This document shows positions 1 to 64,000 of a DNA stretch of 64,000 bases, piece by piece. The notes under the pieces are model-generated. The model saw nothing but the letters and a program-made list of their open reading frames with translations, had not been told where the DNA came from and ran no database searches. Every line of letters starts with the position of its first letter. Position 1 is the first letter of the stretch. The stretch comes from Caecitellus pseudoparvulus. Taxonomy: Eukaryota; Protista; Bigyra: Bicosoecida. The position numbers were made by a program, and so were the translations under genes. The DNA is taken from positions 186,001 to 250,000 of the forward strand of contig CBFFRQ010000020.1 in the NCBI GenBank assembly GCA_965644315.1, in the 5' to 3' direction.

Positions 1-1
1 C

Positions 2-3000
2 ATCAACGTCCATGAAGGCCCCTGGAAAGAAACTGGTTCTACTTGATATTCGGCACAAAGTGCGCGCCGAGTACTGAACGGGTTGCTCGCTAACATCAAG
101 GCTGCCAGGGGCAAGGTGGATAGAGCCAATCTGCAAAGGGTCTGAGGAACTGCTTGTCGCGACCACACTGACACTGCCAGCAGTCAGCCCCCCAGTTGAC
201 GCAGGCCCGGCGGCCGCGCGGATGTTCGACCATGCCTCACCGGCGCCGCTGCTCACTGTGTGCGCTGATGCTGACACGAGAACTGGGGTGGCGCTTCCTC
301 CATACCCACCTGTGCTTGTTATTGCGACGTTGAATCCCAGAACGGAAAACTGGCCGAGACCCGAAAGAGTAGCGTCATCACTCACAGAGAGGGTCACGTC
401 GTCATCGAGGGTCAGGCTTGCTGCTGCAGTTTCCATGATTATTTTCCCTCGTGCACCCGCGCCTGCGCCTTCTCCTGCATACAATGTGACTATTCCTCCA
501 CCCCCGCTGACGCCATCACCGCCAAACAACGACACCTTGCCTCCGGCACCAGTTGACGAACCTGTGCCTCCAAGCAGACTCAAACTACCCCCTGCGGCAG
601 TTTGGCTGTCTCCAGCTTCCAGCAACACATGCCCGCCAACGCCTAGTCCTGAAGCTTGACCTCCCGTGATTTCACTCAGACTTGGTGTGCTGCCGCTTCC
701 ACCGGAGAACAGAATACTGCCTCGTGCAGCCCCACTCGCTGCAGAACTGCTGGTTCCCAGCGCAACATTGCCACTGGCGCCAGAGACGCTGGAGCCCCCA
801 GAAAACAAGATGGAGCCAGTTGAACCTGCAACCCCACCAGTCGATGCCACGCTGATGGTTCCCGAGCCTGTACCCCCACTTCCGCTCTCAACCACTACAA
901 GCCCACCGTTCCCGGAGTCTGAATCGCCAGCAGTAATGGCTACTGCACCTGCATGATTTGCCGGGCCTGCTCCTGCCCCGCAGCTACCAGATGCTACCTC
1001 AACGGGCCCACCTTGGAAGCTGCCTGCGGCGTCTCCTCCACGTGCAGCTATGCTGCTGCTCGTTGACACACTTGAACCAGTGCGTACGCTCAGTGAGCCT
1101 GCTTGGTGCCCATTGGCAGAGGAGAATTCCAGGAGTCCAGAGGGTCCTGCACTCGCTGGTGCGGTGCGAAGAAGAATATCTCCACTTGCAGCAGCCACAG
1201 TGTTGTTTGCTGAAGTGAACAAAACTGCTCCACTGGCGTCGGATGAGGATAGACCAGACCGCACTTCGACGTTTCCTCCTTGTGAAGCACCTGCACTGCC
1301 AGCAAGTAGCATTGCGTTCCCCCCTGCTCCTGCACCTGTACCCGCGGCCGCCGACAAGCCACCGGCAGTTCCAGATGCCGCCCCACCTGCTTGTAGCCGA
1401 ATATGGCCAGCAGTAGGGGTGCCTGTTGCGGCACCGACTGAAGCGATTAAGCTTCCTGCTTCACTGGAGGTGCCTGCTTCTCCTACAATGACAGAAACGG
1501 ATCCGCTGCTACCGCTAGTTGCAGCAGCTGTTGAGAGCAAAATACTGCCACTGCCATCGTCAGAGGAGCCGGAAACTATAGACACCGAGCCGGATGCTCC
1601 GGTGGAAGCTCCGGACTCGAACAGAACATGCCCGCCAGTTCCTCCAGCTGCACCGGCCAGAACACTCACATGGCCTGCAGTAGGCAGCTCTGGCGGGCGA
1701 ATGAGCAAGTCTCCGGCGGCAGGACGACTACCAGTCCTGAGTACGACGTCACCCGCACCCCCCGCCGTTGATGAGCCTGTACTAAGGATAAGGTGGCCAC
1801 TGCTGCGAGCATCCTGAGAACCAGTTATGAGCGAAAGGGCTCCAGATGGGCCGCTATTCCCCACGCCAGATGCTTCAGCCGTGGACAACAGCAGTTTCGC
1901 ACCAGTGTAAGGGGCGCCAGGGGAACTGACAGATCTGCCCGTGACAATCTGCACACCACCCCCGTCACCAGTGCCTTCTCCAGCAAACAGCTCAAGATCC
2001 CCCCCTGCAAACCACGGTGCAGCGTCTGTTTCTGCACTTCCAGCACGAAGCACGACTGAACCTCCACCTGCATCAAGCCCAGAAGTACCAGCAAGCACGC
2101 TGATCGATCCAGCTCGCCCAACGTCATGCAAAGCAACGGACGCAGCCCCTGTTGACAAAAGGATGTGCCCACTGCTGTGGCTCGACGTCCCAGTTGCATG
2201 TCCTGTCGCGGCACCATCCCCTGTTTGTAGGTAAATGGCACCTGTAGCACCACCAAGAGCCCCCGAGGTTGCTGCAGTAGACAGGAAAATGCTCCCAGAC
2301 TTTAAATTGCTTGCCCTGTCATCGGTGGCGCCACTTGACACAGTGATACCTCCTCCACTGCCACCAGCAAGCGTTGAAGACCCTGCTGACACATGAACGC
2401 TTCCTCCTGTCGAAGCAGCACTGGACCCTGCCAAGAACCGCACATCTCCTGCTTCACCTCCGTCCCCTGAAAAGATTTGCAGGAGCCCACTTGAGGTGTC
2501 TGCATCAGAAGTTCCCAGAAGTGATTCTCCGCTTACGTCAGACCCACCCCCAGATTGTGCGGCAACGCTTCCACCTGCTCCGCTTTCAATGACCAGAGCG
2601 GCACCGGTGCCGGAGGCAGAAAGGGACCCCCCAAGCACAGAAATGGAGCCACCTCCTGCAGCTGTGGCAACCCCAACAGATAAAAGAACTGATCCAGAAG
2701 ATGAGCCGGCGCCTGAACTTGCAGAGCCTGTGACCACATCAACCACGCCACTGTTGCTTGATGCATGAGCTCCAGAAGAAAGGAGAATTGACCCAGACCC
2801 ATTGGGATCACTTGAAGAAAGCAGTGAAACGGAGCCACCCCCCAGGGAAGAACCAGTTCCACTTCCAGATTGTAGTAAGAGCGAGCCCCCCAGCTCACTG
2901 CCTGCTGTGCCGCTTGCACTGCCAGAAATAACTGAGACGTGACCCCCCAATCCAGATGAAAGCGGGGCCACTACGTTTGGTCCACCAGTCCCCGCGGACA

Positions 3001-6000
3001 GGGAAATATGCCCACCGACAGAGTCGGTGCCCCCTTGACCACCTGAAATGACCACTTTCCCTGTGACGCCCTCTGCAGCGGCTCCAGCCGTCAAATCCAC
3101 TGATCCACCAGGCGCGCCGGCCATTGCCATGAGTACCAAAGACCCAGAACTTGCCGATGTCACACTTCCAGACGAAAATTTGACACCACCTGTAACGGGG
3201 GCGTCTGGGGATGACATCAAAATGCTTCCGGAGCTCCCAGTTGGAGCCAAACCAGAAGCAATACGGACGTCCCCGGATACAGAGGCGCTATCTCCGGAGC
3301 GAGCACTTGCATGCCCTGCCAAAACGCCTGAGCCCGCACCAAACTCCACACTACCAGTTGAAGCACCAGAGCCGGACACAAAAGCAACGTTGCCTCCATT
3401 GGATCCAGCACCATCTGACGATCCGACCAAGACAGACATCGACCCACTTTCGCCCGATGTCGACCCGCCCGACGCCAGTGTCACGGCCCCGCTGCTGCCC
3501 GACTGTGTCGTGCCAGTGCTCAGCACCAGCGACCCCGACACGCCCGTGCCCACAGCGTTGGCACTGCGCACCACCACTGCACCAGTGCTGGACACCGCAC
3601 CACTCCCGCTCACCACACTCACCACACCGCCCACACTGCCACCAGCAGTGCTGGCGCCAGCTGACACGTACAGGTGCCCGCCGTCGCCCTGGTCAGTGGC
3701 GCCCACAGTCATGGACATGCTGCCGGCGACCCCCGATGTGGCGGCCCCCGTGGCCATGTGCAGGTACCCGGCGTCGCCCGTGAGCGCGGTGCCAGTGCTC
3801 AGCACCATGGCGCCGCTGTCGCCCGATGTCGACCCGCCCGACGCCAGTGTGACGGCCCCGCTGCTGCCCGACTGTGTCGTGCCAGTGCTCAGCACCAGCG
3901 ACCCCGACACACCCGTGCCCACAGCGTTGGCACTGCGCACCACCACTGCACCAGTGCTGGACACCGCACCACTCCCGCTCACCACACTCACCACACCGCC
4001 CACACTGCCACCAGCAGTGCTGGCGCCAGCTGACACGTACACGTGCCCGCCGTCGCCCTGGTCAGTGGCGCCCACAGTCATGGACATGCTGCCGGCGACC
4101 CCCGATGTGGCGGCCCCCGTGGCCATGTGCAGGTACCCGGCGTCGCCCGTGAGCGCGGTGCCAGTGGTCAGCACCATGGCGCCGCTGTCGCCCGTTGTCG
4201 ACCCGCCCGACGCCAGTGTCACGGCCCCGCTGCTGCCCGACTGTGTCGTGCCAGTGCTCAGCACCAGCGACCCCGACACGCCCGTGCCCACAGCGTTGGC
4301 ACTGCGCACCACCACTGCACCAGTGCTGGACACCGCACCACTCCCGCTCACCACACTCACCACACCCCCCACACTGCCACCAGCAGTGCTGGCGCCAGCT
4401 GACACGTACACGTGCCCGCCGTCGCCCTGGTCAGTGGCGCCCACAGTCATGGACATGCTGCCGGCGGCCCCCGATGTGGCGTCCCCTGTTGCCAAAATGA
4501 GGCCACCAGCTGGCCCATCAGTTGAAAGTCCAGACGAAACCACAACACTTCCAGACGACTCTTCAGATGCACCAGAGCCAATGTACAGAGTCCCAGAGCC
4601 GCTTCCACCCCTTGCGACTCCGGAGAACACCCGCAACGCACCCGTTGAGCTTAACGAATCTCCGGATCCGATACTCAGCAAGCCAGACCCTAAGGTTGCG
4701 GATGCACCCGACGCCAGTGTCACGGCCCCGCTGCTGCCCGACTGTGTCGTGCCAGTGCTCAGCACCAGCGACCCCGACACACCCGTGCCCACAGCGTTGG
4801 CACTGCGCACCACCACTGCACCAGTGCTGGACACCGCACCACTCCCGCTCACCACACTCACCACACCCCCCACACTGCCACCAGCAGTGCTGGCGCCAGC
4901 TGACACGTACAGGTGCCCGCCGTCGCCCTGGTCAGTGCCGCCCACAGTCATGGACATGCTGCCGGCGACCCCCGATGTGGCGGCCCCCGTGGCCATGTGC
5001 AGGTACCCGGCGTCGCCCGTGAGCGCGGTGCCAGTGCTCAGCACCATGGCGCCGCTGTCGCCCGATGTCGACCCGCCCGACGCCAGTGTGACGGCCCCGC
5101 TGCTGCCCGACTGTGTCGTGCCAGTGCTCAGCACCATGGCGCCTGACGCCAGCAATGGAGTGTGGCCCGACGCCAGTGTCACGGCCCCGCTGCTGCCCGA
5201 CTGTGTCGTGCCAGTGCTCAGCACCAGCGACCCCGACACACCCGTGCCCACAGCGTTGGCACTGCGCACCACCACTGCACCAGTGCTGGACACCGCACCA
5301 CTCCCGCTCACCACACTCACCACACCCCCCACACTGCCACCAGCAGTGCTGGCGCCAGCTGACACGTACAGGTGCCCGCCGTCGCCCTGGTCAGTGGCGC
5401 CCACAGTCATGGACATGCTGCCGGCGACCCCCGATGTGGCGGCCCCCGTGGCCATGTGCAGGTACCCGGCGTCGCCCGTGAGCGCGGTGCCAGTGCTCAG
5501 CACCATGGCGCCGCTGTCGCCCGATGTCGACCCGCCCGACGCCAGTGTCACGGCCCCGCTGCTGCCCGACTGTGTCGTGCCAGTGCTCAGCACCAGCGAC
5601 CCCGACACACCCGTGCCCACAGCGTTGGCACTGCGCACCACCACTGCACCAGTGCTGGACACCGCACCACTCCCGCTCACCACACTCACCACACCCCCCA
5701 CACTGCCACCAGCAGTGCTGGCGCCAGCTGACACGTACAGGTGCCCGCCGTCGCCCTGGTCAGTGCCGCCCACAGTCATGGACATGCTGCCGGCGGCCCC
5801 CGATGTGGCGGCCCCCGTGGCCATGTGCAGGTACCCGGCGTCGCCCGTGAGCGCGGTGCCAGTGCTCAGCACCATGGCGCCGCTGTCGCCCGATGTCGAC
5901 CCGCCCGACGCCAGTGTCACGGCCCCGCTGCTGCCCGACTGTGTCGTGCCAGTGCTCAGCACCATGGCGCCTGACGCCAGCAATGGAGTGTGGCCCGACG

Positions 6001-9000
6001 CCAGTGTCACGGCCCCGCTGCTGCCCGACTGTGTCGTGCCAGTGCTCAGCACCAGCGACCCCGACACACCCGTGCCCACAGCGTTGGCACTGCGCACCAC
6101 CACTGCACCAGTGCTGGACACCGCACCACTCCCGCTCACCACACTCACCACACCGCCCACACTGCCACCAGCAGTGCTGGCGCCAGCTGACACGTACAGG
6201 TGCCCGCCGTCGCCCTGGTCAGTGCCGCCCACAGTCATGGACATGCTGCCGGCGACCCCCGATGTGGCGGCCCCCGTGGCCATGTGCAGGTACCCGGCGT
6301 CGCCCGTGAGCGCGGTGCCAGTGCTCAGCACCATGGCGCCGCTGTCGCCCGATGTCGACCCGCCCGACGCCAGTGTGACGGCCCCGCTGCTGCCCGACTG
6401 TGTCGTGCCAGTGCTCAGCACCATGGCGCCTGACGCCAGCAATGGAGTGTGGCCCGACGCCAGTGTGACGGCCCCGCTGCTGCCCGACTGTGTCGTGCCA
6501 GTGCTCAGCACCAGCGACCCCGACACGCCCGTGCCCACAGCGTTGGCACTGCGCACCACCACTGCACCAGTGCTGGACACCGCACCACTCCCGCTCACCA
6601 CACTCACCACACCGCCCACACTGCCACCAGCAGTGCTGGCGCCAGCTGACACGTACACGTGCCCGCCGTCGCCCTGGTCAGTGCCGCCCACAGTCATGGA
6701 CATGCTGCCGGCGACCCCCGATGTGGCGGCCCCCGTGGCCATGTGCAGGTACCCGGCGTCGCCCGTGAGCGCGGTGCCAGTGCTCAGCACCATGGCGCCG
6801 CTGTCGCCCGATGTCGACCCGCCCGACGCCAGTGTCACGGCCCCGCTGCTGCCCGACTGTGTCGTGCCAGTGCTCAGCACCATGGCGCCGCTGTCGCCCG
6901 TTGTCGACCCGCCCGACGCCAGTGTCACGGCCCCGCTGCTGCCCGACTGTGTCGTGCCAGTGCTCAGCACCAGCGACCCCGACACACCCGTGCCCACAGC
7001 GTTGGCACTGCGCACCACCACTGCACCAGTGCTGGACACCGCACCACTCCCGCTCACCACACTCACCACACCCCCCACACTGCCACCAGCAGTGCTGGCG
7101 CCAGCTGACACGTACACGTGCCCGCCGTCGCCCTGGTCAGTGCCGCCCACAGTCATGGACATGCTGCCGGCGACCCCCGATGTGGCGGCCCCCGTGGCCA
7201 TGTGCAGGTACCCGGCGTCGCCCGTGAGCGCGGTGCCAGTGCTCAGCACCATGGCGCCGCTGTCGCCCGATGTCGACCCGCCCGACGCCAGTGTCACGGC
7301 CCCGCTGCTGCCCGACTGTGTCGTGCCAGTGCTCAGCACCAGCGACCCCGACACACCCGTGCCCACAGCGTTGGCACTGCGCACCACCACTGCACCAGTG
7401 CTGGACACCGCACCACTCCCGCTCACCACACTCACCACACCGCCCACACTGCCACCAGCAGTGCTGGCGCCAGCTGACACGTACACGTGCCCGCCGTCGC
7501 CCTGGTCAGTGCCGCCCACAGTCATGGACATGCTGCCGGCGGCCCCCGATGTGGCGGCCCCCGTGGCCATGTGCAGGTACCCGGCGTCGCCCGTGAGCGC
7601 GGTGCCAGTGGTCAGCACCATGGCGCCACTGTCGCCCGATGTCGACCCGCCCGACGCCAGTGTCACGGCCCCGCTGCTGCCCGACTGTGTCGTGCCAGTG
7701 CTCAGCACCATGGCGCCGCTGTCGCCCGATGTCGACCCGCCCGACGCCAGTGTCACGGCCCCGCTGCTGCCCGACTGTGTCGTGCCAGTGCTCAGCACCA
7801 GCGACCCCGACACGCCCGTGCCCACAGCGTTGGCACTGCGCACCACCACTGCACCAGTGCTGGACACCGCACCACTCCCGCTCACCACACTCACCACACC
7901 CCCCACACTGCCACCAGCAGTGCTGGCGCCAGCTGACACGTACAGGTGCCCGCCGTCGCCCTGGTCAGTGCCGCCCACAGTCATGGACATGCTGCCGGCG
8001 ACCCCCGATGTGGCGGCCCCCGTGGCCATGTGCAGGTACCCGGCGTCGCCCGTGAGCGCGGTGCCAGTGCTCAGCACCATGGCGCCGCTGTCGCCCGATG
8101 TCGACCCGCCCGACGCCAGTGTCACGGCCCCGCTGCTGCCCGACTGTGTCGTGCCAGTGCTCAGCACCATGGCGCCGCTGTCGCCCGATGTCGACCCGCC
8201 CGACGCCAGTGTCACGGCCCCGCTGCTGCCCGACTGTGTCGTGCCAGTGCTCAGCACCAGCGACCCCGACACGCCCGTGCCCACAGCGTTGGCACTGCGC
8301 ACCACCACTGCACCAGTGCTGGACACCGCACCACTCCCGCTCACCACACTCACCACACCCCCCACACTGCCACCAGCAGTGCTGGCGCCAGCTGACACGT
8401 ACACGTGCCCGCCGTCGCCCTGGTCAGTGCCGCCCACAGTCATGGACATGCTGCCGGCGACCCCCGATGTGGCGGCCCCCGTGGCCATGTGCAGGTACCC
8501 GGCGTCGCCCGTGAGCGCGGTGCCAGTGCTCAGCACCATGGCGCCGCTGTCGCCCGATGTCGACCCGCCCGACGCCAGTGTCACGGCCCCGCTGCTGCCC
8601 GACTGTGTCGTGCCAGTGCTCAGCACCAGCGACCCCGACACACCCGTGCCCACAGCGTTGGCACTGCGCACCACCACTGCACCAGTGCTGGACACCGCAC
8701 CACTCCCGCTCACCACACTCACCACACCCCCGACACTGCCACCAGCAGTGCTGGCGCCAGCTGACACGTACACGTGCCCGCCGTCGCCCTGGTCAGTGCC
8801 GCCCACAGTCATGGACATGCTGCCGGCGACCCCCGATGTGGCGGCCCCCGTGGCCATGTGCAGGTACCCGGCGTCGCCCGTGAGCGCGGTGCCAGTGCTC
8901 AGCACCATGGCGCCACTGTCGCCCGATGTCGACCCGCCCGACGCCAGTGTCACGGCCCCGCTGCTGCCCGACTGTGTCGTGCCAGTGCTCAGCACCATGG

Positions 9001-12000: not shown

Positions 12001-12583
12001 CCGTGAGCGCGGTGCCAGTGCTCAGCACCATGGCGCCGCTGTCGCCCGATGTCGACCCGCCCGACGCCAGTGTCACGGCCCCGCTGCTGCCCGACTGTGT
12101 CGTGCCAGTGCTCAGCACCATGGCGCCGCTGTCGCCCGATGTCGACCCGCCCGACGCCAGTGTGACGGCCCCGCTGCTGCCCGACTGTGTCGTGCCAGTG
12201 CTCAGCACCAGCGACCCCGACACGCCCGTGCCCACAGCGTTGGCACTGCGCACCACCACTGCACCAGTGCTGGACACCGCACCACTCCCGCTCACCACAC
12301 TCACCACACCCCCCACACTGCCACCAGCAGTGCTGGCGCCAGCTGACACGTACACGTGCCCGCCGTCGCCCTGGTCAGTGCCGCCCACAGTCATGGACAT
12401 GCTGCCGGCGGCCCCCGATGTGGCGGCCCCCGTGGCCATGTGCAGGTACCCGGCGTCGCCCGTGAGCGCGGTGCCAGTGCTCAGCACCATGGCGCCGCTG
12501 TCGCCCGATGTCGACCCGCCCGACGCCAGTGTGACGGCCCCGCTGCTGCCCGACTGTGTCGTGCCAGTGCTCAGCACCATGGC
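2..12583 (-). CDS. C-proximal segment of the giant protein (~4190 aa, runs off the left edge)
   Basis: In-frame ATGs exist (e.g. 12580-12578) but the track lists no ORF here, which implies no stop before the window edge. Manual translation of the last ~170 codons confirms an open frame. The repeat grammar continues to ~440. Confidence 0.85.
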
Positions 12584-54500: not shown

Positions 54501-57500
54501 TTGGATGGACACTGCCCCACCTTCATCTGCAACGCCAACTCTAACGTGAATGGGGCCTGATTCAAGGTGCCCTTCACCACTCGCGAGCGTCATGTTCCCA
54601 CTTTGGTCCGCAGGGCCAGAACTGACCAGCATACCACCGGTTGCCGATGTACCGTCACCACTTCCAAGGAGAAGCACACCAGAATCCAACTTCCCAGTCC
54701 CGCTCTCTACCTCAACGTGTCCGGATGATGCAGCTGCACCTGAGGAGAGGCCCACATGGCCTGACTCTCCGGAGGCTGTGCTACCGCTTTCAGCAAACAG
54801 CACTCCACTTGACACCGTCGCCCCACCAGTCTGCACAGTGACAATCCCTGTTGCATCTGCATCCCTTGTGTACATGGCCACCGCGCCTGAAACATGCTGA
54901 GCTGACCCACCTGAGCGCGCCGACACAAGCCCAGATCCACGTGATGAGCTTGCCCCCGACGAAATCGTGGCCTCGGCCCCATGCGACTTGGAATCCTGGC
55001 CCTTGACTTCAACACTCCCAGTTGCTCCACTGGGGATTTCAGTGTGGCCACTCGACATGTGGACACCCCCACTTGCCCTTGTGCCAGTACCAGACTCCAG
55101 ACTGAGAATCCCTGAGCTTGAGACCGCCACATCACCGCCCCCGGAGCTAGAGTGAATAACAACCGAACCTGACGCAAACCTGGCATCCAGACTCTGCAAA
55201 GTCACATTACCATTCTTTGCTCTCACGCGAGCAATGCCACCAGAATTGCCTGCTTCTGCCTTCATAACAGTATCTGCACCCACCAGGGTCACTGCAGATC
55301 GGGAGCTGCCACTGCCAGCTTGCAACAGCACGTCGCCCGCCCCCCCCACACTGCTTCGAGCCTGCAAGGATGCGTGCCCACTCGCCCCTGAGCTACTAAC
55401 TGTCTCAATGCTCACGGGTGCTGCGCTACCAATGAGTGCAGACCCACCCACTCCCTCCGCTGACTCACCAGCACCAGCCACCACGCGCTCACCAGTGCCA
55501 GCCTCAAGCCCCACATCACCCCCCACCAAACCACTACCACCCGACACCTGCACAGTTGACCCCATACCAGCAAGCACGCTCACTGAGCCGCCCACAAGCC
55601 CATCGCCACCCTGCACACCGACAGCCCCTGCAACACCACCCCCACCTGCGCCCGACACCATGGCTACTGACCCGGCCTGTCCTCCCACGCTTCTCCCCCC
55701 CGCCACCGACACAGCACCATGGCCTCGACCAACCCTCGTGCTCACATCACCAGCACCCAGCACTCCCCCGCCACTGCCAATCGCCACAGCGCCAGACCTG
55801 CCCACAGCGCTGTCCCCGCTGCGCACATCCAAGGCCCCTGACGCCACACCACCACCTGACATGCCGGTGCCCAATGCCACACTGTCCCCGCCCTCAATGC
55901 TGACTGACCCACTCTGTTCGCTCAAGCTTGAGCCGCTCACAGTCAACACACTGCCTCCACGCACAGCTCGGCCACCACCACCAAGGACTCTGACCTCCGA
56001 CCCCGCCACACCAATGCTGCCGCCCTCCACACCCCCGCCAGCGGACACAGTCACATGGCCGGCTGTCGCCCCTTCCCCGCTCACAATGCGGGACTCCCCC
56101 CCATCATCACTGCCATCGCCTCCACCGACCCTGACACCTGCCGCACCAGCCAACTCCACACCACCCCCCTGACCCTGCCCACGCCCCGCCCCAACACCAA
56201 CACTCGACCCAGACAACACAACTGACCCCGACGCCAGGCTGCTTTGCCCAGCACCCACCATGATCGACCCTGCCGTGCTGCTTCCCTCGCCCACCCGCAT
56301 GGTCACATCCCCACTTGCACCTTGCCCGGCACCGCTCCCCAGCACAACACTGCCGGACAGCCCCCCATCACTTGCACTGCCGCTCCGCACCTGCACACGG
56401 CCACCTCCCCCATGCACAGACGCCCCTGCATGTACACTCACGGCGCCCCCAGCACTCCCCACCACACCGGCATCGCCACCCGCCCACCTCACACTGCCAC
56501 CAACGCCCCTCGCCGCCACGCCTCCCCTCATCGCTAGCCTGCCACCAACTCCTCCATCGCTGACACCGCTGGACACTGTGACACCCCCCCTTCCCACGAC
56601 ACGCACGTTGCCGCCGCTCCCTGCAGCGCCACCAGCAACGACACTGGAGCCACCACCAACACCTGCATCTGATGCTCCACCTGACACACCCACACTGCCT
56701 CCCACGATGCCCACCGCCCCTGCCCCTGTACCGCCATGGCCTGCTTGCACTGACAAGCCACCACTAGTGCCGTTCACACCCCTCCCGCTCACGACGCGCA
56801 CAGCCCCACTACCACCTGCACTGCTGCCGCTCCCCAGACTCGCTGCACCGCTGGACCCTCCTGAGCTGGAACCGCTGCCCAGTGTGACGCCCCCACTGGC
56901 CCCACTGCCGCTGCTACTCACCGTCACATTGCCTGACGCTCCATGCTCAGACCCACCAGCTACTGCACTCACACTGCCACCAATCACACTGCCATCACCA
57001 CCGACCAAGTGCAAGGCGCCACCACCCACCGCACCACTGCCGACCGCCACCTGCACCGCACCGGACTCACTGCCCTCCCCACTCGTCATCATCACACCCC
57101 CTGACGAGCCACCAGAGCCGCCACTCTGCACACCCACGGCGCCCCCACTCGCCACACCCACACCATCTGCCCCGATCACCGTGACAGAGCCGCTGCTGCC
57201 CTCCAGAGCGCTGCCTGTGACCACCGCTAGAGCCCCCCCTGACCCACTCCCAGCAGCACCACTGCCAAACACCACGCTGCCACTTGCTTCACCGCCTCCA
57301 CTTAGCACCGTCACACCACCGCTGCCCGCTGCAGTACTGGACCCACTCCTGGTGCTGACAAGCCCGCTCGTGCCGTTCACACTTGACCCGCTGGACACCT
57401 CAACTGCAGAGCTTGCATCATCGCCTCCACCTCCACGCACCACGGCTCCCCCACCCACATCACCCCCACCACCAGCCGCCAAAGCGTGACCACCGGCATG

Positions 57501-60500
57501 ATTCTTGCTGGGTGCCACCATCATGTGCACGTTGGACCCAGCGCCACTGATGGCGTTACCTGCAGCAAGTGTGATTGCACTGCCCTGCATGGCGACAACC
57601 CTTCCCTCCAATGCTGCACCATTGCTGCCATCCACCGACACCGCACTTCCGCTCACTACAGCATGCCCGCCACTAATCGTCACTCGACCAGTGTGTCCCA
57701 TCGCATCGCCAGTTGCAATGAGCATGCCTCCAGCACCTGTGCCGCCTGTGCCTGTGTCGCCTGTCCTCACCTGCACATTGCCAGATTGACGTGGCGCTGA
57801 GCCACTCTGCAAGCGTACAACACCAGACCTGTTCCCGGGCCCAGAAGATGCATATATCGTCCCTGCCTCAGTACGTGCAGATCCCACAACTAGATTCAAC
57901 CCGCTTGATGTTGATGAGGCTGATCCAGACACGATGGAGAGCTCACCGCTTGAACCTGCTCCTGATGTATGCAAGCTAATGCCGCCAGAACGGCGCTCCC
58001 CGGTTCCCGATGCAACTTGCACGTGGCCTGATTTTCCTGTTCTTGCGGTGTTTTTCAGCGACCTCACAGCGACCGCCCCTGAAGAAGTGTTGCCAGACAA
58101 ACCAAGAGGAAACACAGCATTCTCTGCCTGCAACGCTGCAACCATGTCGATCGCCACTTTCGTTTGATCGACTTCGTGAAAGTCTGGAAGAGAGAAGTTC
58201 TTGTCAGCAAACGACATATCATTGGCTTTGCGAACATACTCCGGGAGCACAGAGCTCACTTCCTGGGCGATGAGCCCTCGAGTGGATTCGTCGCCGATCC
58301 CACGGACGCGACGCCACTCGGCCGTGAAGCGATACTGCTTGACCTTAAGTTTCAGGAGCTTCTGGCGTATGGCAAAAGGATCAACAGGCTCAATGTCTCT
58401 TTTGATGCGGCGATCTGAGAACGAGAATACCTGTGGAATATTGACGGGGATGTGTGACAAAAACTTGGACGGGAGAACACGTGCAACAGTAGATCCTGCT
58501 GCAGCGAAATGAACCGATTCAGCTGCTGAAAGGTTCATCCTAAATGCTGCTACATGGAGTGGTTTATCTTGTGCGTAAACGCTTACTCCAGATGGCTGCA
58601 CACTAACAAAGGTGCTAGACGATGATACGTTTAGTGTGTTCGAACGAAATATAGCTCTGTCTCCAACAACATCAACATTTGAAGCTGAAAAAAGTCGAAC
58701 AAGTCCACCTACTTTGCCACCTCCCCCAGCCACACCAACCACGCTCCCACCACCAGCTACACGTGATGCCCCCGACTCAACCCCCACCACGCCACCGCCG
58801 CCAACCCGCACACCGCTTCCACCGGCCAACCGCAAGCCACCATCAGCATGTGTGCCTACGTCCACATTGCCTGCACCAACCACGCCTACTGACTGCCCAG
58901 CGAAAGACACCTCACCCCCAGCACCGCTGCCACTGGCCCCCCCGTGCACACGCACGGCACCACCCAAACCGCCCTCGGCGCGGCCCCCCCGCACGACTGC
59001 ATCGCCTGCGTGCACTGCAGCTGCACCGCTCTCAATGGACACGCCCCCGCTGCCATGACTCCCACTGCCGCTCCCCACATCCACGCCACCGGCCCCCACG
59101 ACGCTCACCGCGCCACCCGCCACACTGATGCCGCCTGACTCAACACGCCCCGACCCACTCTCATGTGCAACATCACCACCTGCCCCTGCCTTGCTGCCTC
59201 CACCTGCCACTTCGATCGCCGTGCCCCTCACATGCACACCTCTGCCGGACACTGCCACACCGCCCGGTCCATGAACGGCAGTACTGCCCCCCACAGCACC
59301 CCCACCACCTGCCACACTCACCAGACCACCCACAGCAGTCCCCGACCCACCCAACAGCCCCACATCACCCGATGCCGTCGACACTGACACATCGCCCGCT
59401 GCACTCGTGCCGCCCCCTGACAGCACTGACACGCCACCCTGGCCATGCACTTGCATCTCCGTCTGCACCTGCACTTGCACGCTGCCGCTTGCGTGGGAGT
59501 CCGCTGAAGCAAGCGTGGACACTGCCACTGAGCCGGCTGGGCCTGCTGTGGAGCTGCCACCAGCAACGTTGACACTTGCACCCGACATCCCAACACCTTG
59601 CCCTGCCACGGTCATAGGCCCGCTGTGTGCGCCCTTGCTTGATCCAGACAGCTCTACTATGCTCCCAGACTCTCGCAGTGCGTCCATCGTTGCGAGGTAC
59701 ACTTCTCCACTTTGTGGATGCCCCTTCCCCGAAGTGAGAACCAAAGACCCGCCGCTGATGTCCGAACGCCCAGCGGCTACCTTGATGGCACCTGCGCTTT
59801 GTTGTGCTTGGCCAGTTTGAGCGGTCAGCCCCCCTGATCCAATCTCTGAGGCCTGTGTTTGGATGGACACTGCCCCACCTTCATCTGCAACGCCAACTCT
59901 AATATGAATGGGGCCTGATTCAAGGTGCCCTTCACCACTCGCGAGCGTCATGTTCCCACTTTGGTCCGCAGGGCCAGAACTGACCAGCATACCACCGGTT
60001 GCCGATGTACCGTCACCACTTCCAAGGAGAAGCACACCAGAATCCAACTTCCCAGTCCCGCTCTCTACCTCAACGTGTCCGGATGATGCAGCTGCACCTG
60101 AGGAGAGGCCCACATGGCCTGACTCTCCGGAGGCTGTGCTACCGCTTTCAGCAAACAGCACTCCACTTGACACCGTCGCCCCACCAGTCTGCACAGTGAC
60201 AATCCCTGTTGCATCTGCATCCCTTGTGTACATGGCCACCGCGCCTGAAACATGCTGAGCTGACCCACCTGAGCGCGCCGACACAAGCCCAGATCCACGT
60301 GATGAGCTTGCCCCCGACGAAATCGTGGCCTCGGCCCCATGCGACTTGGAATCCTGGCCCTTGACTTCAACACTCCCAGTTGCTCCACTGGGGATTTCAG
60401 TGTGGCCACTCGACATGTGGACACCCCCACTTGCCCTTGTGCCAGTACCAGACTCCAGACTGAGAATCCCTGAGCTTGAGATCGCCACATCACCGCCCCC

Positions 60501-63500
60501 GGAGCTAGAGTGAATAGCAACCGAACCTGACGCAAACCTGGCATCCAGACTCTGCAAAGTCACATTACCATTCTTTGCTCTCACGCGAGCAATGCCACCA
60601 GAATTGCCTGCTTCTGCCTTCAGAACAGCATCTGCACCCACCAGGGTCACTGCAGATCGGGAGCTGCCACTGCCAGCTTGCAACAGCACGTCGCCCGCCC
60701 CCCCCACACTGCTTCGAGCCTGCAAGGATGCGTGCCCACTCGCCCCTGAGCTACTAACTGTCTCAATGCTCACGGGTGCTGCGCTACCAATGAGTGCAGA
60801 CCCACCCACTCCCTCCGCTGACTCACCAGCACCAGCCACCACGCGCTCACCAGTGCCAGCCTCAAGCCCCACATCACCCCCCACCAAACCACTACCACCC
60901 GACACCTGCACAGTTGACCCCATACCAGCAAGCACGCTCACTGAGCCGCCCACAAGCCCATCGCCACCCTGCACACCGACAGCCCCTGCAACACCACCCC
61001 CACCTGCGCCCGACACCATGGCTACTGACCCGGCCTGTCCTCCCACGCTTCTCCCCCCCGCCACCGACACAGCACCATGGCCTCGACCAACCCTCGTGCT
61101 CACATCACCAGCACCCAGCACTCCCCCGCCACTGCCAATCGCCACAGCGCCAGACCTGCCCACAGCGCTGTCCCCGCTGCGCACATCCAAGGCCCCTGAC
61201 GCCACACCACCACCTGACATGCCGGTGCCCAATGCCACACTGTCCCCGCCCTCAATGCTGACTGACCCACTCTGTTCGCTCGAGCTTGAGCCGCTCACAG
61301 CCAACACAGTACCTCCACGCACAGCTCGGCCACCACCACCAAGGACTCTGACCTCCGACCCCGCAACAGCAATGCTGCCGCCCTCCACACCCCCGCCAGC
61401 GGACACAGTCACATGGCCGGCTGTCGCCCCTTCCCCGCTCACAATGCGGGACTCCCCCCCATCATCACTGCCATCGCCTCCACCGACCCTGACACCTGCC
61501 GCACCAGCCAACTCCACACCACCCCCCTGACCCTGCCCACGCCCCGCCCCAACACCAACACTCGACCCAGACAACACAACTGACCCCGACGCCAGGCTGC
61601 TTTGCCCAGCACCCACCATGATCGACCCTGCCGTGCTGCTTCCCTCGCCCACCCGCATGGTCACATCCCCACTTGCACCTTGCCCGGCACCGCTCCCCAG
61701 CACAACACTGCCGGACAGCCCCCCATCACTTGCACTGCCGCTCCGCACCTGCACACGGCCACCTCCCCCATGCACAGATGCCCCTGCATGTACACTCACG
61801 GCGCCCCCAGCACTCCCCACCACACCGGCATCGCCACCCGCCCACCTCACACTGCCACCAACGCCCCTCGCCGCCACGCCTCCCCTCATCGCTAGCCTGC
61901 CACCAACTCCTCCATCGCTGACACCGCTGGACACTGTGACACCCCCCCTTCCCACGACACGCACGTTGCCGCCGCTCCCTGCAGCGCCACCAGCAACGAC
62001 ACTGGAGCCACCACCAACACCTGCATCTGATGCTCCACCTGACACACCCACACTGCCTCCCACGATGCCCACCGCCCCTGCCCCTGTACCGCCATGGCCT
62101 GCTTGCACTGACAAGCCACCACTAGTGCCGTTCACACCCCTCCCGCTCACGACGCGCACAGCCCCACTACCACCTGCACTGCTGCCGCTCCCCAGACTCG
62201 CTGCACCGCTGGACCCTCCTGAGCTGGAACCGCTGCCCAGTGTGACGCCCCCACTGGCCCCACTGCCGCTGCTACTCACCGTCACATTGCCTGACGCTCC
62301 ATGCTCAGACCCACCAGCTACTGCACTCACACTGCCACCAATCACACTGCCATCACCACCGACCAAGTGCAAGGCGCCACCACCCACCGCACCACTGCCG
62401 ACCGCCACCTGCACCGCACCGGACTCACTGCCCTCCCCACTCGTCATCATCACACCCCCTGACGAGCCACCAGAGCCGCCACTCTGCACACCCACGGCGC
62501 CCCCACTCGCCACACCCACACCATCTGCCCCGATCACCGTGACAGAGCCGCTGCTGCCCTCCAGAGCGCTGCCTGTGACCACCGCTAGAGCCCCCCCTGA
62601 CCCACTCCCAGCAGCACCACTGCCAAACACCACGCTGCCACTTGCTTCACCGCCTCCACTTAGCACCGTCACACCACCGCTGCCCGCTGCAGTACTGGAC
62701 CCACTCCTGGTGCTGACAAGCCCGCTCGTGCCGTTCACACTTGACCCGCTGGACACCTCAACTGCAGAGCTTGCATCATCGCCCCCACCTCCACGCACCA
62801 CGGCTCCCCCACCCACATCACCCCCACCACCAGCCGCCAAAGCGTGACCACCGCCCTGACTCCCGGCACCCGCCTCGACAGTCAAAGACTCTGCTTGCAT
62901 CTGCAAGGCACCGCCCGCGCCCTGGCTGGAGCCCACCATGAGCTTCGCGCCCCCCCCAGCAGACCCAAGCGACACGTCGCCCACTTGCCCACTTGCCAGC
63001 AGGACTGCCTCGCCAGCCACCAATGCCGACCCTGATGCCTGGACGCCGATGTCTCCGCTGCCTGCCACCCCTGTGCCGGTGTGCATGGCCAGTCCTCCGC
63101 TGCGCCCCGATGTGGCCACTCCGCTTGCCAACACAAGCGAGCTCCCACCTGCTTGGCTGCTGCCTGCCTGCGCTGCAACACGCCCACTCCTGCCCCCCGC
63201 CCCGCTGATGACAGCGACGCCGCCCCCCTTTGACATGCTCAATGCAAGGCTATCGCCCCCTTGCACCTCCACAGTGCCTGATGTAGTCTTGCCAGGGCCT
63301 GTGCCAATGCGCACCTGCCCACCCTGCCCGCTGGCCCCCGCTGAGCCAACTCCCACCTCCACGCGGCCACTTGAGCCACCAACTGAACCACCGTGCCCGC
63401 TCTCCAGTGTCAAGGCACCTGACCCTCTCGCGCCCTCGGCACTCGTCACTGATACCTCGCCTGTCGTCGCTTCCCGCCCTGACAAGGCTTCAGAGAACCT

Positions 63501-63998: not shown

Positions 63999-64000
63999 AC

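What the first reader, a model, noticed from the sequence alone, without database searches (positions are those of the whole stretch)
2..63998. Titin-scale (>21,000 aa) self-processing fibre protein: phage-tailspike-type chaperone domains inside a giant beta-repeat
Seen: one minus-strand reading frame covers the entire window, is open at both edges, shows no intron or intergenic gap, and consists of over a thousand ~15-aa strand/turn repeats with embedded S74/ICA domains. Established: S74/ICA domains trimerise, template folding of the triple beta-helix N-terminal to them (endosialidase K1F and related phage tailspikes/fibres) and then auto-cleave through a Ser-Lys dyad; MYRF uses the same module. 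Inference: this is a homotrimeric beta-helical filament built by the same mechanism at far larger scale. At ~0.48 nm rise per repeat the visible part alone would be several hundred nm to ~0.7 um long, compatible with a surface hair, tether, adhesin, extrusome fibre or molecular ruler. I know of no characterised protein with this architecture.
Basis: partly seen in the sequence, partly recalled or inferred. Interest (0 to 1): 0.93.

Follow-up and report, generated by a model that had tools for sequence, protein, structure and literature searches.

The report
Giant secreted self-cleaving trimeric fibre gene
The whole window is one exon of a gene of about 30,400 codons in a marine protist, which most likely makes a micrometre-long, three-chain beta-helical surface or extracellular fibre that folds and cuts itself with two built-in phage-type chaperone domains, a kind of protist fibre that has only just been recognised.

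Summary
The observation largely holds. The minus strand is open across all 64 kb, but as three frame segments joined at two small indel clusters, not one frame. Two Peptidase_S74/ICA domains are present (Pfam E 4e-25) with the Ser-Lys dyad intact. A 13-15-residue strand/turn repeat runs throughout.

With flanks, the gene spans window 90932 to -661 and has about 30,400 codons (about 2.8 MDa). It has three short 5' exons (signal peptide, two PSI-like modules) and one 90.7-kb exon. There is no transmembrane segment.

Four further frameshifts outside the window are C6/C5 homopolymer differences between 99.5%-identical repeat copies, so they are probably assembly errors.

Differences from a related strain are mostly synonymous in this frame (17 of 28, p 6e-4).

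A 325-residue repeat+ICA fragment is predicted to form an intertwined trimer (score 0.82, best control 0.00). The closest solved relative is the MYRF ICA domain.

A second gene of over 25,000 codons with the same plan lies in the same genome. Smaller relatives occur in oomycetes and metagenomes.

A 2025 cryo-EM preprint describes a trimeric glycofibril (TLP-12) that it links to ~20,000-residue Amoebophrya repeat proteins with an ICA domain.

Verdict: a real gene and a new variant of a known kind. Transcription, cleavage, array length and function are not shown.

The parts
2..63998 (-). Part of the single giant exon (exon 4) of the fibre gene. The whole exon runs from window 90015 to -661, that is contig C20 276015-185339.
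   Evidence: ORF chain; 5' exon model; stop and 3' end.
32241..63998 (-). Frame segment A. With its upstream flank it is 11,619 codons open.
12574..32412 (-). Frame segment B, 6,613 codons, entirely within the 369/459-bp array.
2..12835 (-). Frame segment C. It runs on to the stop codon 661 bases beyond the window's left edge (4,499 codons in all).
32260..32266 (-). Frame break 2: two single-base insertions within 6 nt, relative to sister repeat copies.
12585..12609 (-). Frame break 1: a cluster of small indels and mismatches (net +2) in one array copy.
   Evidence: TRF periods of 92 and 371 instead of 90 and 369.
58107..58454 (-). ICA / Peptidase_S74 domain 1. The predicted nucleophile Ser codon is at 58416-58418, in the motif FSF-SDRRIK.
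   Evidence: Pfam; sequence; family HMM E 4e-45.
52836..53183 (-). ICA / Peptidase_S74 domain 2, 99% identical to domain 1. The Ser codon is at 53145-53147.
58044..59018 (-). 325-residue repeat stalk plus ICA fragment that was modelled as a homotrimer.
   Evidence: score 0.82, best of 3 controls 0.00, pLDDT at least 83, runs agree in at least 94% of contacts.
51740..64000 (-). Super-repeat of ~5.26-5.37 kb at 99%+ identity. It continues to window 81295, about 5.6 copies in all. Only the two 3'-most copies carry the ICA cassette.
63447..63770 (-). Non-repeat, helix-rich ~108-residue cassette that takes the place of the ICA cassette in the upstream super-repeat copies.
   Evidence: Only its last ~36 residues resemble the ICA C-terminal helix, and that match is not significant (hhalign probability 2%).
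44257..51739 (-). Unique stretch of ~2,500 diverged 13-15-residue repeats between ICA 2 and the array.
   Evidence: It is held by DNA runs of several studies and by marine metagenomes.
3450..44256 (-). Homogenised tandem array. About 90 units of 459 bp (153 aa, ten short repeats) or 369 bp (123 aa), 97-99% identical, G+C at third codon positions 0.81.
1..3449 (-). Start of the C-terminal ~1,370 residues of diverged repeats. These end, outside the window, in a ~200-residue Cys-containing domain and a Pro/Ser/Thr tail.

Best explanation
The window is the middle two thirds of a real nuclear gene of a marine heterotrophic protist. The gene encodes a secreted polypeptide of about 30,400 residues (~2.8 MDa).

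Architecture, from the N-terminus:
- a signal peptide;
- two PSI-like cysteine modules;
- about 10,200 residues of 13-15-residue S-G-x-V-x-L-x-S-G strand/turn repeats;
- an ICA (Peptidase_S74) domain;
- 1,640 more repeat residues;
- a second ICA domain;
- about 17,800 residues of repeats, including a homogenised 153-residue array;
- a small C-terminal domain.

Inferred mechanism: three chains associate in the secretory pathway at the ICA modules. Each ICA trimer templates the intertwined triple beta-helix on its N-terminal side. It then cuts the chain in front of its own Ser (Ser-Lys dyad), as in phage endosialidase and MYRF. One precursor would thus yield up to three trimeric rods of about 10,700, 1,760 and 17,900 residues per chain. 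Together they would be roughly 1-2 micrometres long. With 27% Ser+Thr they are probably heavily O-glycosylated, like the TLP-12 glycofibril.

Shown here: the gene structure, the domain identities, the intact catalytic motif, the repeat periodicity, the family and the paralogue.

Inferred only: trimer formation, cleavage, glycosylation, and any role such as surface hair, adhesive or tether fibre.

The six frame breaks are most likely consensus errors of a long-read assembly in near-identical repeats.
For: - Domains: PF13884 E 4.1e-25. SDRRIK is present in both copies. Across 39 family members Ser is kept in 29 and Lys in 34, while D and R are invariant.
- Solved relatives: the family profile hits MYRF ICA 7dc3 at E 1.5e-15 and T4 gp37 6f45 at 0.0077. 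Its repeat part hits a gp5/VgrG beta-helix (9gtr) at 0.008. The dyad equivalence is taken from PMC8326128.
- Trimer model: score 0.82, best of 3 controls 0.00. That mark was reached by 21 of 30 proteins solved as pairs of one chain and by 0 of 23 solved as single chains. Contacts cover residues 6-212 of the stalk as well as the ICA.
- Coding evidence: 28 listed differences to a ~1%-diverged strain give 17 synonymous and 11 non-synonymous in this frame (expected 30% synonymous, binomial p 6e-4). There were no indels in 4.4 kb.
- Gene ends: the 5' exons have GTGAGT/GTGCGT donors and CAG acceptors in phase, and encode a signal peptide. One PSI module has Pfam E 1.7e-6, the other only 0.033. There is a TGA stop followed by a drop in G+C, and no hydrophobic segment anywhere.
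- Frameshifts: the four upstream ones are C6 versus C5 runs. The in-frame C6 state is the majority and is also found on unplaced contig C156.
- Family: 244 library hits. About half of those with enough flanking sequence have G/S/A/T/V-rich repeat flanks. Some carry 2-3 ICA domains. Named members are from Aphanomyces.
- Paralogue: it has the same plan, and its ICA domains are 52% identical to these.
- Precedent: TLP-12 is a trimeric beta-helix fibril of GSxxSx7 repeats. Its authors link it to a 19,853-residue Amoebophrya protein with an ICA domain.
Against: - No experimental or read-level proof of transcription. The one reads call gave no splice joints. The only contigs from runs guessed to be RNA were two of ~170 nt at depth ~3. 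RNA-labelled runs hold only 7-38% of the sampled words of a unique stretch, and most of those labels are guesses.
- Six frame breaks stand in the assembly. None could be checked against reads, because they lie in 99%-identical repeats.
- Contigs end inside the array (C20 right end, C214 left end) and one repeat copy is unplaced (C156). Array length is therefore uncertain.
- The monomer AlphaFold model of two array units was poor (pLDDT 43), so there is no independent fold support for the array.
- The trimer pass may reflect memory of solved ICA trimers.
- The 17,900 residues after ICA 2 have no ICA at their C-terminal side. The phage-type folding mechanism does not obviously cover them.
- G+C at third codon positions outside the array (0.45-0.60) is low next to this region's overall G+C.
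Confidence: 0.62

Rival explanations
1. The gene is real and secreted, but the repeats form a single-chain beta-solenoid or an extended mucin-like glycoprotein rather than an intertwined trimer. The ICA domains then act only as self-cleaving or oligomerising joints, or are relics.
For: The monomer model shows regular strands every ~15 residues, though at low confidence. Several relatives have Ala, Asp or Gly in place of the nucleophile Ser (10 of 39), so cleavage is dispensable in parts of the family. Most of the protein lies C-terminal to the last ICA.
Against: The trimer model places the whole 200-residue stalk in inter-chain contact, with controls at 0.00. In every solved case the ICA domain is an obligate trimer next to a trimeric beta-helix (PMC8326128). 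TLP-12 shows that short G/S repeats of this kind can form a trimer.
Confidence: 0.15
2. The locus is a decaying pseudogene. The six frame breaks are real, and no full-length product is made.
For: Six frame breaks in 91 kb. Third-position G+C is unusually low outside the array. There is no direct RNA evidence.
Against: - Four breaks are single-base C-run length differences between otherwise identical copies, and the in-frame state is the commoner one.
- The other two are local noisy patches, typical of unpolished long-read consensus.
- There are no in-frame stops anywhere else in 30,000 codons.
- There is an excess of synonymous change and no indels against another strain.
- The catalytic motifs are intact, and the paralogue has the same design with only three breaks.
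Confidence: 0.1
3. The size is largely an assembly artefact. The gene is real, but the array and the super-repeat are over-expanded or mis-joined, and the true product is much shorter. Separately, the open frame in the array could be a by-product of a G+C-rich satellite.
For: Two contig ends lie in the array and one super-repeat copy sits on an unplaced 5.4-kb contig. The plus strand also shows open stretches of thousands of codons.
Against: Two distinct entries into the array and two distinct exits from it are assembled, so at least two arrays exist. Array units carry a structured pattern of shared variants and a 369/459 alternation, rather than being identical copies. The array is in frame with unique coding sequence on both sides. 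Related proteins of ~20,000 residues are reported elsewhere.
Confidence: 0.1

Closest known systems
TLP-12 glycofibril and its candidate source proteins (Amoebophrya sp. A120 A0A8J1ZHD7, 19,853 residues); bioRxiv 10.1101/2025.09.30.679562
   Same: A giant protist protein made of more than a thousand short Gly/Ser-rich repeats together with an ICA domain. The fibril itself was solved by cryo-EM as an intertwined homotrimeric beta-helix with a dense O-glycan coat. It is the best functional analogue.
   Different: Its repeat is a 12-residue GSxxSx7 unit, not a 13-15-residue S-G-x-V-x-L-x-S-G unit. Its single ICA is C-terminal, whereas here two ICA domains lie about one third of the way along the chain and another domain closes it. 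It is linked to alveolates, whereas the nearest kin of this gene are oomycete proteins. Sequence homology to A0A8J1ZHD7 could not be tested here.
Uncharacterised 'Peptidase S74 domain-containing proteins' of oomycetes (Aphanomyces astaci A0A9X8DIJ6, A. euteiches CAK4417441.1) and unnamed metagenome or EukProt fragments
   Same: The closest sequence relatives: 35-50% identity over a ~150-residue extended ICA module, including the conserved SHVP...PSDxRIK lead-in. They have the same S/G-rich ~15-residue repeats on both sides.
   Different: As deposited they are fragments of 300-1,800 residues. None is described functionally. Some carry three ICA modules ~400 residues apart, of which only one keeps the Ser.
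MYRF / MrfA membrane-bound transcription factors (ICA structure 7dc3)
   Same: The closest solved ICA domain (profile E 1.5e-15). It has the same P/x-S-D-x-R-x-K cleavage motif, it is eukaryotic, its ICA is internal, and after cleavage the ICA stays on the C-terminal fragment.
   Different: This gene has no NDT80 DNA-binding domain and no transmembrane segment. It has a signal peptide and tens of thousands of repeat residues.
Phage tailspike and tail-fibre C-terminal intramolecular chaperone domains (endosialidase endoNF, T5 pb1, T4 gp37 6f45), and triple beta-helix spikes (T4 gp5/VgrG)
   Same: The same domain family and the same Ser-Lys dyad. The chaperone sits C-terminal to a trimeric beta-helix. 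The repeat region has a marginal profile match to a gp5/VgrG beta-helix.
   Different: Those are virion proteins of hundreds to about 1,300 residues, with one terminal ICA that is discarded. Here the gene is a cellular eukaryotic one with introns, the ICA domains are internal, and the scale is 30-fold larger.
Other giant proteins (titin at ~35,000 residues; PKZILLA-1 at ~45,000; giant bacterial adhesins). From my own knowledge, not tested here.
   Same: Comparable length, and a single very long exon built from homogenised repeats.
   Different: The folds and functions are unrelated. None of them uses ICA-assisted trimerisation.

Membership tests
[quoted passage not shown] | Match to the family model above the curated threshold | tested here: met
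   88.3 bits against a cut-off of 22, E 4.1e-25, two stretches. In a six-frame search of the whole genome each copy scores 52.2 bits.
[quoted passage not shown] | Catalytic Ser, with Lys five residues downstream (S911/K916 in endoNF, S587/K592 in MyRF) | tested here: met
   SDRRIK is present in both copies. Column conservation is given. The equivalence is taken from PMC8326128.
[quoted passage not shown] | Forms a homotrimer together with an upstream beta-helical stalk | tested here: met
   Prediction only. Score 0.82 against a best control of 0.00. The mark was reached by 21 of 30 solved one-chain pairs and 0 of 23 single chains. pLDDT is at least 83 and the runs agree in at least 94% of contacts. 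Stalk residues 6-212 are in inter-chain contact. The pass may be from memory of solved ICA trimers.
[quoted passage not shown] | Autoproteolytic cleavage in front of the Ser | not testable with these tools
   This needs protein chemistry: mass spectrometry of termini, and a Ser-to-Ala mutant.
TLP-12-type protist glycofibril proteins | A giant chain of more than 1,000 short Gly/Ser-rich repeats plus an ICA domain | tested here: met
   About 30,400 codons and about 2,000 units of 13-15 residues. G is 23% and S 18% of residues. ICA domains.
TLP-12-type protist glycofibril proteins | Dodecapeptide GSxxSx7 repeat | tested here: not met
   The commonest spacings are 13-15 residues, with consensus S-G-x-V-x-L-x-S-G.
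TLP-12-type protist glycofibril proteins | ICA at the C-terminus of the repeat region | tested here: not met
   The two ICA domains lie about 10,700 and 12,500 residues from the N-terminus, with 17,900 residues following them. The C-terminus is a different ~200-residue domain.
TLP-12-type protist glycofibril proteins | Dense O-glycan shell; recoverable as an extracellular fibril | not testable with these tools
   Only the composition (27% Ser+Thr) and the signal peptide are suggestive.
MYRF-type membrane-bound transcription factors | NDT80/PhoG DNA-binding domain N-terminal to the ICA, and a transmembrane helix C-terminal to it | tested here: not met
   No Pfam family other than S74 and PSI is found anywhere in the chain. 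No 19-residue window has mean hydropathy above 2.4.
Phage tailspike / tail-fibre proteins | Virion gene in a viral genome, with one terminal ICA released after folding | tested here: not met
   The gene has spliceosomal-type introns and a signal peptide. Ordinary eukaryotic genes (MCM10, kinesin) lie on the same contig. The ICA domains are internal.

The most novel reading that the evidence does not exclude
The gene is a multi-ICA 'polyfibre' precursor. One 2.8-MDa chain is registered into a trimer at internal ICA nodes and is cut into three different micrometre-scale, glycan-coated rods. These rods would build a visible cell structure of a marine bacterivorous flagellate, such as a flagellar or surface hair, an attachment thread or a prey-capture fibre. 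The family, which is widespread in stramenopiles and closer to MYRF than to phage ICA domains, would be the eukaryotic pool from which the MYRF self-cleavage module was recruited.
Probability: 0.2. Interest if true: 0.88.

Novelty: new variant of a known kind. Interest (0 to 1): 0.7.

Why it matters
- **Size.** If the assembled length is right, this is one of the longest protein-coding genes known (about 30,400 codons, mostly in one exon), and a second gene of similar size lies in the same genome.
- **Range of ICA-assisted fibres.** ICA-assisted triple beta-helix assembly is known from phage fibres and from one animal transcription factor. This gene extends it to secreted cellular fibres of protists, and to a new layout with internal ICA nodes. 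That layout raises the question of how tens of thousands of residues are kept in register.
- **Source of environmental fibrils.** It gives a sequence-defined, culturable candidate source for the trimeric glycofibrils now being seen in environmental cryo-EM.
- **Origin of the MYRF module.** It offers a eukaryotic family against which the origin of the MYRF cleavage module can be tested.
- **Annotation practice.** Long-read homopolymer errors in homogenised repeats can break such genes into many 'hypothetical proteins'. This is probably why the family is invisible in current annotations.

Tried and rejected
- **Monomer AlphaFold models.** Two array units (306 aa) gave mean pLDDT 42.7. The C-terminal 258 residues gave pLDDT 35.9. 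Both are unusable, so no fold search was run.
- **The search for homologous proteins, three searches, all blank.** The queries were the C-terminal domain, a 5,000-residue query restricted to the ICA region and the family alignment A1. Given the word and length limits of that tool, the blanks say little.
- **ESM Atlas, C-terminal domain.** It gave only weak leads: score 0.81 to phage hypothetical proteins, H_lectin and Gp53-like_C. These are not used.
- **Read laying (one call, 6,000 letters as instructed, on the 5' end).** It showed contiguous DNA contigs of two strains. It showed no splice joints and almost no RNA, so the intron model and the transcription strand remain unconfirmed.
- **Pfam on other ORFs.** The longest ORFs upstream of the gene gave only unrelated genes: CCD97-like, MCM10 and kinesin.
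- **Degenerate ICA in the upstream cassette.** I tested whether the helix-rich cassette in the upstream super-repeat copies is a degenerate ICA. hhalign gave probability 2%, so this is rejected as unsupported.
- **Phytophthora large-peripheral-vesicle (Lpv) giant glycoproteins.** The paper I read gives no sequence features to compare, so the idea is dropped.
- **Identity of the organism.** The genome has no chlorophyll a/b-binding protein genes. Its size and contig number do not match the published Cafeteria assemblies. The organism is left unnamed.
- **Spliced model.** The 5' model was searched exon by exon, by reference. The joined coding sequence was translated only inside a script to check the phases and was not sent to any search or fold tool.
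Full report
**1. What is in the window**

The window has 66.5% G+C and a strong C-over-G skew on the plus strand. On the minus strand three frames are open in turn. They cover window 63998-32241 (10,586 codons), 32412-12574 (6,613 codons) and 12835-2 (4,278 codons).

I compared each break with sister copies of the repeat it lies in.
- At 32260-32266 there are two single-base insertions 5 nt apart.
- At 12585-12609 there is a ~25-nt patch of mismatches and small indels.
- Both sit inside units that are otherwise about 99% identical to their neighbours.

The translated product is 23% Gly, 18% Ser, 13% Ala, 12% Val and 8% Thr.

**2. Repeat structure**

Three levels of repetition are present.
- **Short unit.** A 13-15-residue unit is found everywhere. 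Hydrophobic autocorrelation peaks at lags 13-15 and at their multiples, and there is a lag-2 strand signal. The consensus is S-G-x-V/L-x-L/V-x-S-G followed by 5-7 G/S/A-rich residues.
- **Tandem array.** Window 3450-44256 is an array of about 90 units of 459 bp (65 spacings) or 369 bp (21 spacings), 97-99% identical. One unit encodes ten short repeats.
- **Super-repeat.** A unit of about 5.26-5.37 kb at 99%+ identity runs from window 51740 to 81295, beyond the window.

**3. The ICA domains**

Pfam finds Peptidase_S74 twice, and nothing else, in the 10,000 window codons scanned. A further 4,278 scanned gave nothing. About 7,000 codons of the array were not scanned.

The two ICA copies are 99% identical. 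They lie at window 58107-58454 and 52836-53183. Both read FSF-SDRRIK at the start.

According to the MyRF ICA crystal-structure paper, MyRF is cut between P586 and S587. In that paper S587 and K592 are equivalent to S911 and K916 of endoNF, and both are indispensable for cleavage (PMC8326128). The window's Ser and Lys sit at exactly this spacing.

Only the two 3'-most super-repeat copies carry the ICA cassette. The upstream copies carry a different, helix-rich cassette of about 108 residues. Its likeness to the ICA C-terminal helix is not significant.

**4. The whole gene**

The window is contig C20:186001-250000 of a 30.6-Mb assembly in 215 contigs. With flanks, the open chain runs from window 90127 down to a TGA stop at -664..-662.

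*5' end.* I infer three short exons.
- Exon 1 (90932-90847) encodes a Met followed by a typical signal peptide.
- Exon 2 (90701-90526) and exon 3 (90359-90090) each encode a Cys-rich PSI-like module.
- The donors are GTGAGT or GTGCGT and the acceptors are CAG. The introns are 145, 166 and 74 nt, and the phases fit.
- Searched exon by exon by reference, exon 3 matches Pfam PSI at E 1.7e-6. Exon 2 matches only weakly (E 0.033).
- The joined sequence was not sent to any search tool.

*Size.* The model has 91,209 coding bases, about 30,400 codons and about 2.8 MDa.

*3' end.* The C-terminus holds about 1,370 residues of diverged repeats, then a ~200-residue Cys-containing domain with no detectable relatives, then a Pro/Ser/Thr tail. 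No segment anywhere is hydrophobic enough to be a membrane anchor. G+C drops right after the stop.

**5. Are the frame breaks real?**

Four further breaks lie upstream of the window. Each is a C6 versus C5 run at one of two sites of the super-repeat.
- C5 is found at window 66895, 72156, 73856 and 79117.
- C6 is found in the other copies and on the unplaced contig C156.
- The super-repeat period of 5,261 bp is one base short of a multiple of three.

This is the usual signature of homopolymer under-calling where polishing cannot tell near-identical copies apart. I could not test it with reads, because short contigs cannot be placed in 99%-identical repeats. My judgement that all six breaks are artefacts is therefore an inference (about 80%).

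**6. Is it coding?**

Openness alone is weak evidence here, because the plus strand also has open runs of up to 6,718 codons. Four other lines are stronger.
- The domain matches described above.
- A protein family (section 8).
- The substitution pattern against another strain. An independent assembly of a roughly 1%-diverged strain (run X7) covers 4.4 kb of the 5' part without a single indel. Of its 28 listed differences inside the giant exon, 17 fall on third codon positions and 17 are synonymous in the minus-strand frame. The other five frames give 3-13 synonymous changes, and 30% would be expected by chance (binomial p 6e-4).
- Shared variants among array units. Outside one block variant they are mostly synonymous or conservative, but there are only ten of them.

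Direct evidence of transcription is thin.
- Four runs guessed to be RNA hold 17-38% of the sampled words of the unique stretch 44300-51700.
- One marine metatranscriptome holds 7%.
- On the 5' end only two ~170-nt low-depth contigs from such a run were laid, and no splice joint was seen.

**7. Trimer test**

Three copies of window 58044-59018 (325 residues) gave a score of 0.82 in all three runs, against 0.00 for the best of three controls. pLDDT was at least 83 and the runs agreed in at least 94% of contacts.

In the tool's calibration the mark was reached by 21 of 30 proteins solved as pairs of one chain and by 0 of 23 solved as single chains. The tool warns that a pass may reflect memory of solved relatives, and that its calibration used two copies rather than three.

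The confident inter-chain contacts are not confined to the ICA. They run through residues 6-212 of the stalk, which is what an intertwined beta-helix would give.

A profile of the family matches the MYRF ICA structure 7dc3 (E 1.5e-15) and T4 gp37 6f45 (E 0.0077). Through the repeat part it matches a gp5/VgrG beta-helix spike, 9gtr (E 0.008, marginal).

A monomer AlphaFold model of two array units shows a strand every ~15 residues but at pLDDT 43, so it decides nothing.

**8. Relatives**

An exhaustive HMMER search with a 230-residue ICA fragment found 244 proteins at E up to 0.001 and 86 at E up to 1e-10.
- The best hits share 35-50% identity over about 150 residues, including a conserved lead-in (SHVP ... 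PSDxRIK). They have the same S/G-rich ~15-residue repeats on both sides.
- Of 129 hits with enough flanking sequence, 63 have G/S/A/T/V-rich flanks.
- One 1,767-residue fragment has three ICA modules about 400 residues apart, and only the first keeps the Ser.
- Named members come from the oomycetes Aphanomyces astaci and A. euteiches. Weaker hits are MYRF and MrfA proteins.
- Across the 39 aligned modules Ser is kept in 29 and Lys in 34.

**9. A second gene**

The genome holds two more S74 domains, on contig C214.
- C214 (76 kb) is almost entirely one minus-strand chain of about 25,400 codons with three frame breaks. It runs off the contig at its 5' end.
- Its unique part is only about 30% identical to gene 1 at the protein level. 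Its two ICA domains are 52% identical to those of gene 1 and 99% identical to each other.
- Its 3' 34 kb is the same 459-bp array, at about 99% DNA identity.
- The right end of C20 also ends in that array. From there it continues into about 1,250 diverged repeat residues and a small C-terminal domain that looks related by eye to gene 1's.
- So C214 most likely joins the end of C20. That would give two giant paralogues on one strand, with ordinary genes (MCM10, kinesin) among those in the roughly 40 kb between them.

**10. Comparison with what is known**

The module of a trimeric beta-helix followed by an ICA that cuts itself off is established for phage endosialidases and fibres, and for MYRF (PMC3742443, PMC8326128).

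A preprint of October 2025 (bioRxiv 10.1101/2025.09.30.679562) reports the cryo-EM structure of an environmental glycofibril, TLP-12.
- Its core is a trimer of GSxxSx7 dodecapeptide repeats woven into a triple beta-helix, with a rise of 9.6 Å per repeat, under a thick O-glycan shell.
- The authors link it to about 150 alveolate proteins. One is an Amoebophrya protein of 19,853 residues with 1,263 repeats and a C-terminal ICA domain.

What differs here:
- the repeat unit (13-15 residues, with a clear V-x-L strand);
- two internal ICA domains and a non-ICA C-terminal domain;
- the PSI head;
- the even larger size;
- the nearest kin being oomycete proteins, and a heterotrophic host (no chlorophyll a/b-binding protein genes).

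I therefore class it as a new variant of a known kind.

**11. Mechanism and its open points**

Cleavage at both Ser residues would give fragments of about 10,710, 1,757 and 17,936 residues. Each ICA would remain on the N-terminus of the following fragment, as it does in MYRF.

Length depends on the rise per unit.
- At 0.48 nm per unit the whole chain would be about 1 micrometre long.
- At the TLP-12 value of 0.96 nm it would be about 2 micrometres.
- The window's share is 0.7-1.4 micrometres.

The main gap in the model is how the tail of 17,900 residues behind the last ICA would fold in register. The small C-terminal domain may be its nucleus, but this is untested.

Function is not shown. A secreted, unanchored, probably glycosylated rod suggests a surface hair, an adhesive or tether fibre, or a shed glycofibril.

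Noticed in passing
Contig C214 (loci L014-L021, whole 76,165 bases) and contig C20:316422-320533 (L025, L026): A second giant gene of the same design. It has about 25,400 codons on C214 with three frame breaks. Its two ICA domains (C214 43868-44218 and 49746-50096) carry a canonical PSDRRIK motif. It has the same 459-bp array. Its likely 3' end lies on the right end of C20, so C214 probably joins C20 there.
   Followed up: partly
window 3450-44256 against 44257-64000: G+C at third codon positions is 0.81 in the homogenised array but only 0.45-0.60 in the rest of the same exon. This could reflect GC-biased gene conversion in the recombining array, or a different age of the parts.
   Followed up: no
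window 3450-44256, unit positions 318-338 of the 459-bp unit: Ten of the 65 459-bp units share an alternative 21-nt block that changes seven consecutive codons in frame. It marks sub-families of units within the array.
   Followed up: no
window 63447-63770 and the equivalent places at about window 68,800, 74,100 and 79,400: The upstream super-repeat copies carry a helix-rich non-repeat cassette where the two downstream copies carry the ICA domain. Its end (…LALQGEGLRF…) recalls the ICA C-terminal helix, but the profile comparison is not significant.
   Followed up: partly
Contig C156:997-5373 (L002): An unplaced 5.4-kb contig is a further copy of the super-repeat, essentially 100% identical to window 62001-64000. 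It has the in-frame C6 state at both homopolymer sites. This shows that the assembler could not place all copies.
   Followed up: partly
window 1-64000, plus strand: There are mirror open frames of up to 6,718 codons on the plus strand. They are by-products of the stop-poor G+C-rich repeat, and any gene caller could mistake them for genes.
   Followed up: partly
Contig C20:277,500-295,000 (L010, L011, L023): This stretch has 74-79% G+C and long open frames in all six frames. The only Pfam match is a CCD97-like C-terminal domain. MCM10 and kinesin genes follow at about 303-311 kb.
   Followed up: partly
L012 (GCA_024449685.1) 5215-18413 and L013 (GCA_024449875.1) 5680-17452: In two large, highly fragmented eukaryotic assemblies the relatives lie in runs of adjacent same-strand ORFs of more than 13 kb in L012 and about 12 kb in L013. 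They are probably also single giant genes that were split by gene calling. Of the three ICA modules in P0001, only one keeps the nucleophile Ser.
   Followed up: no
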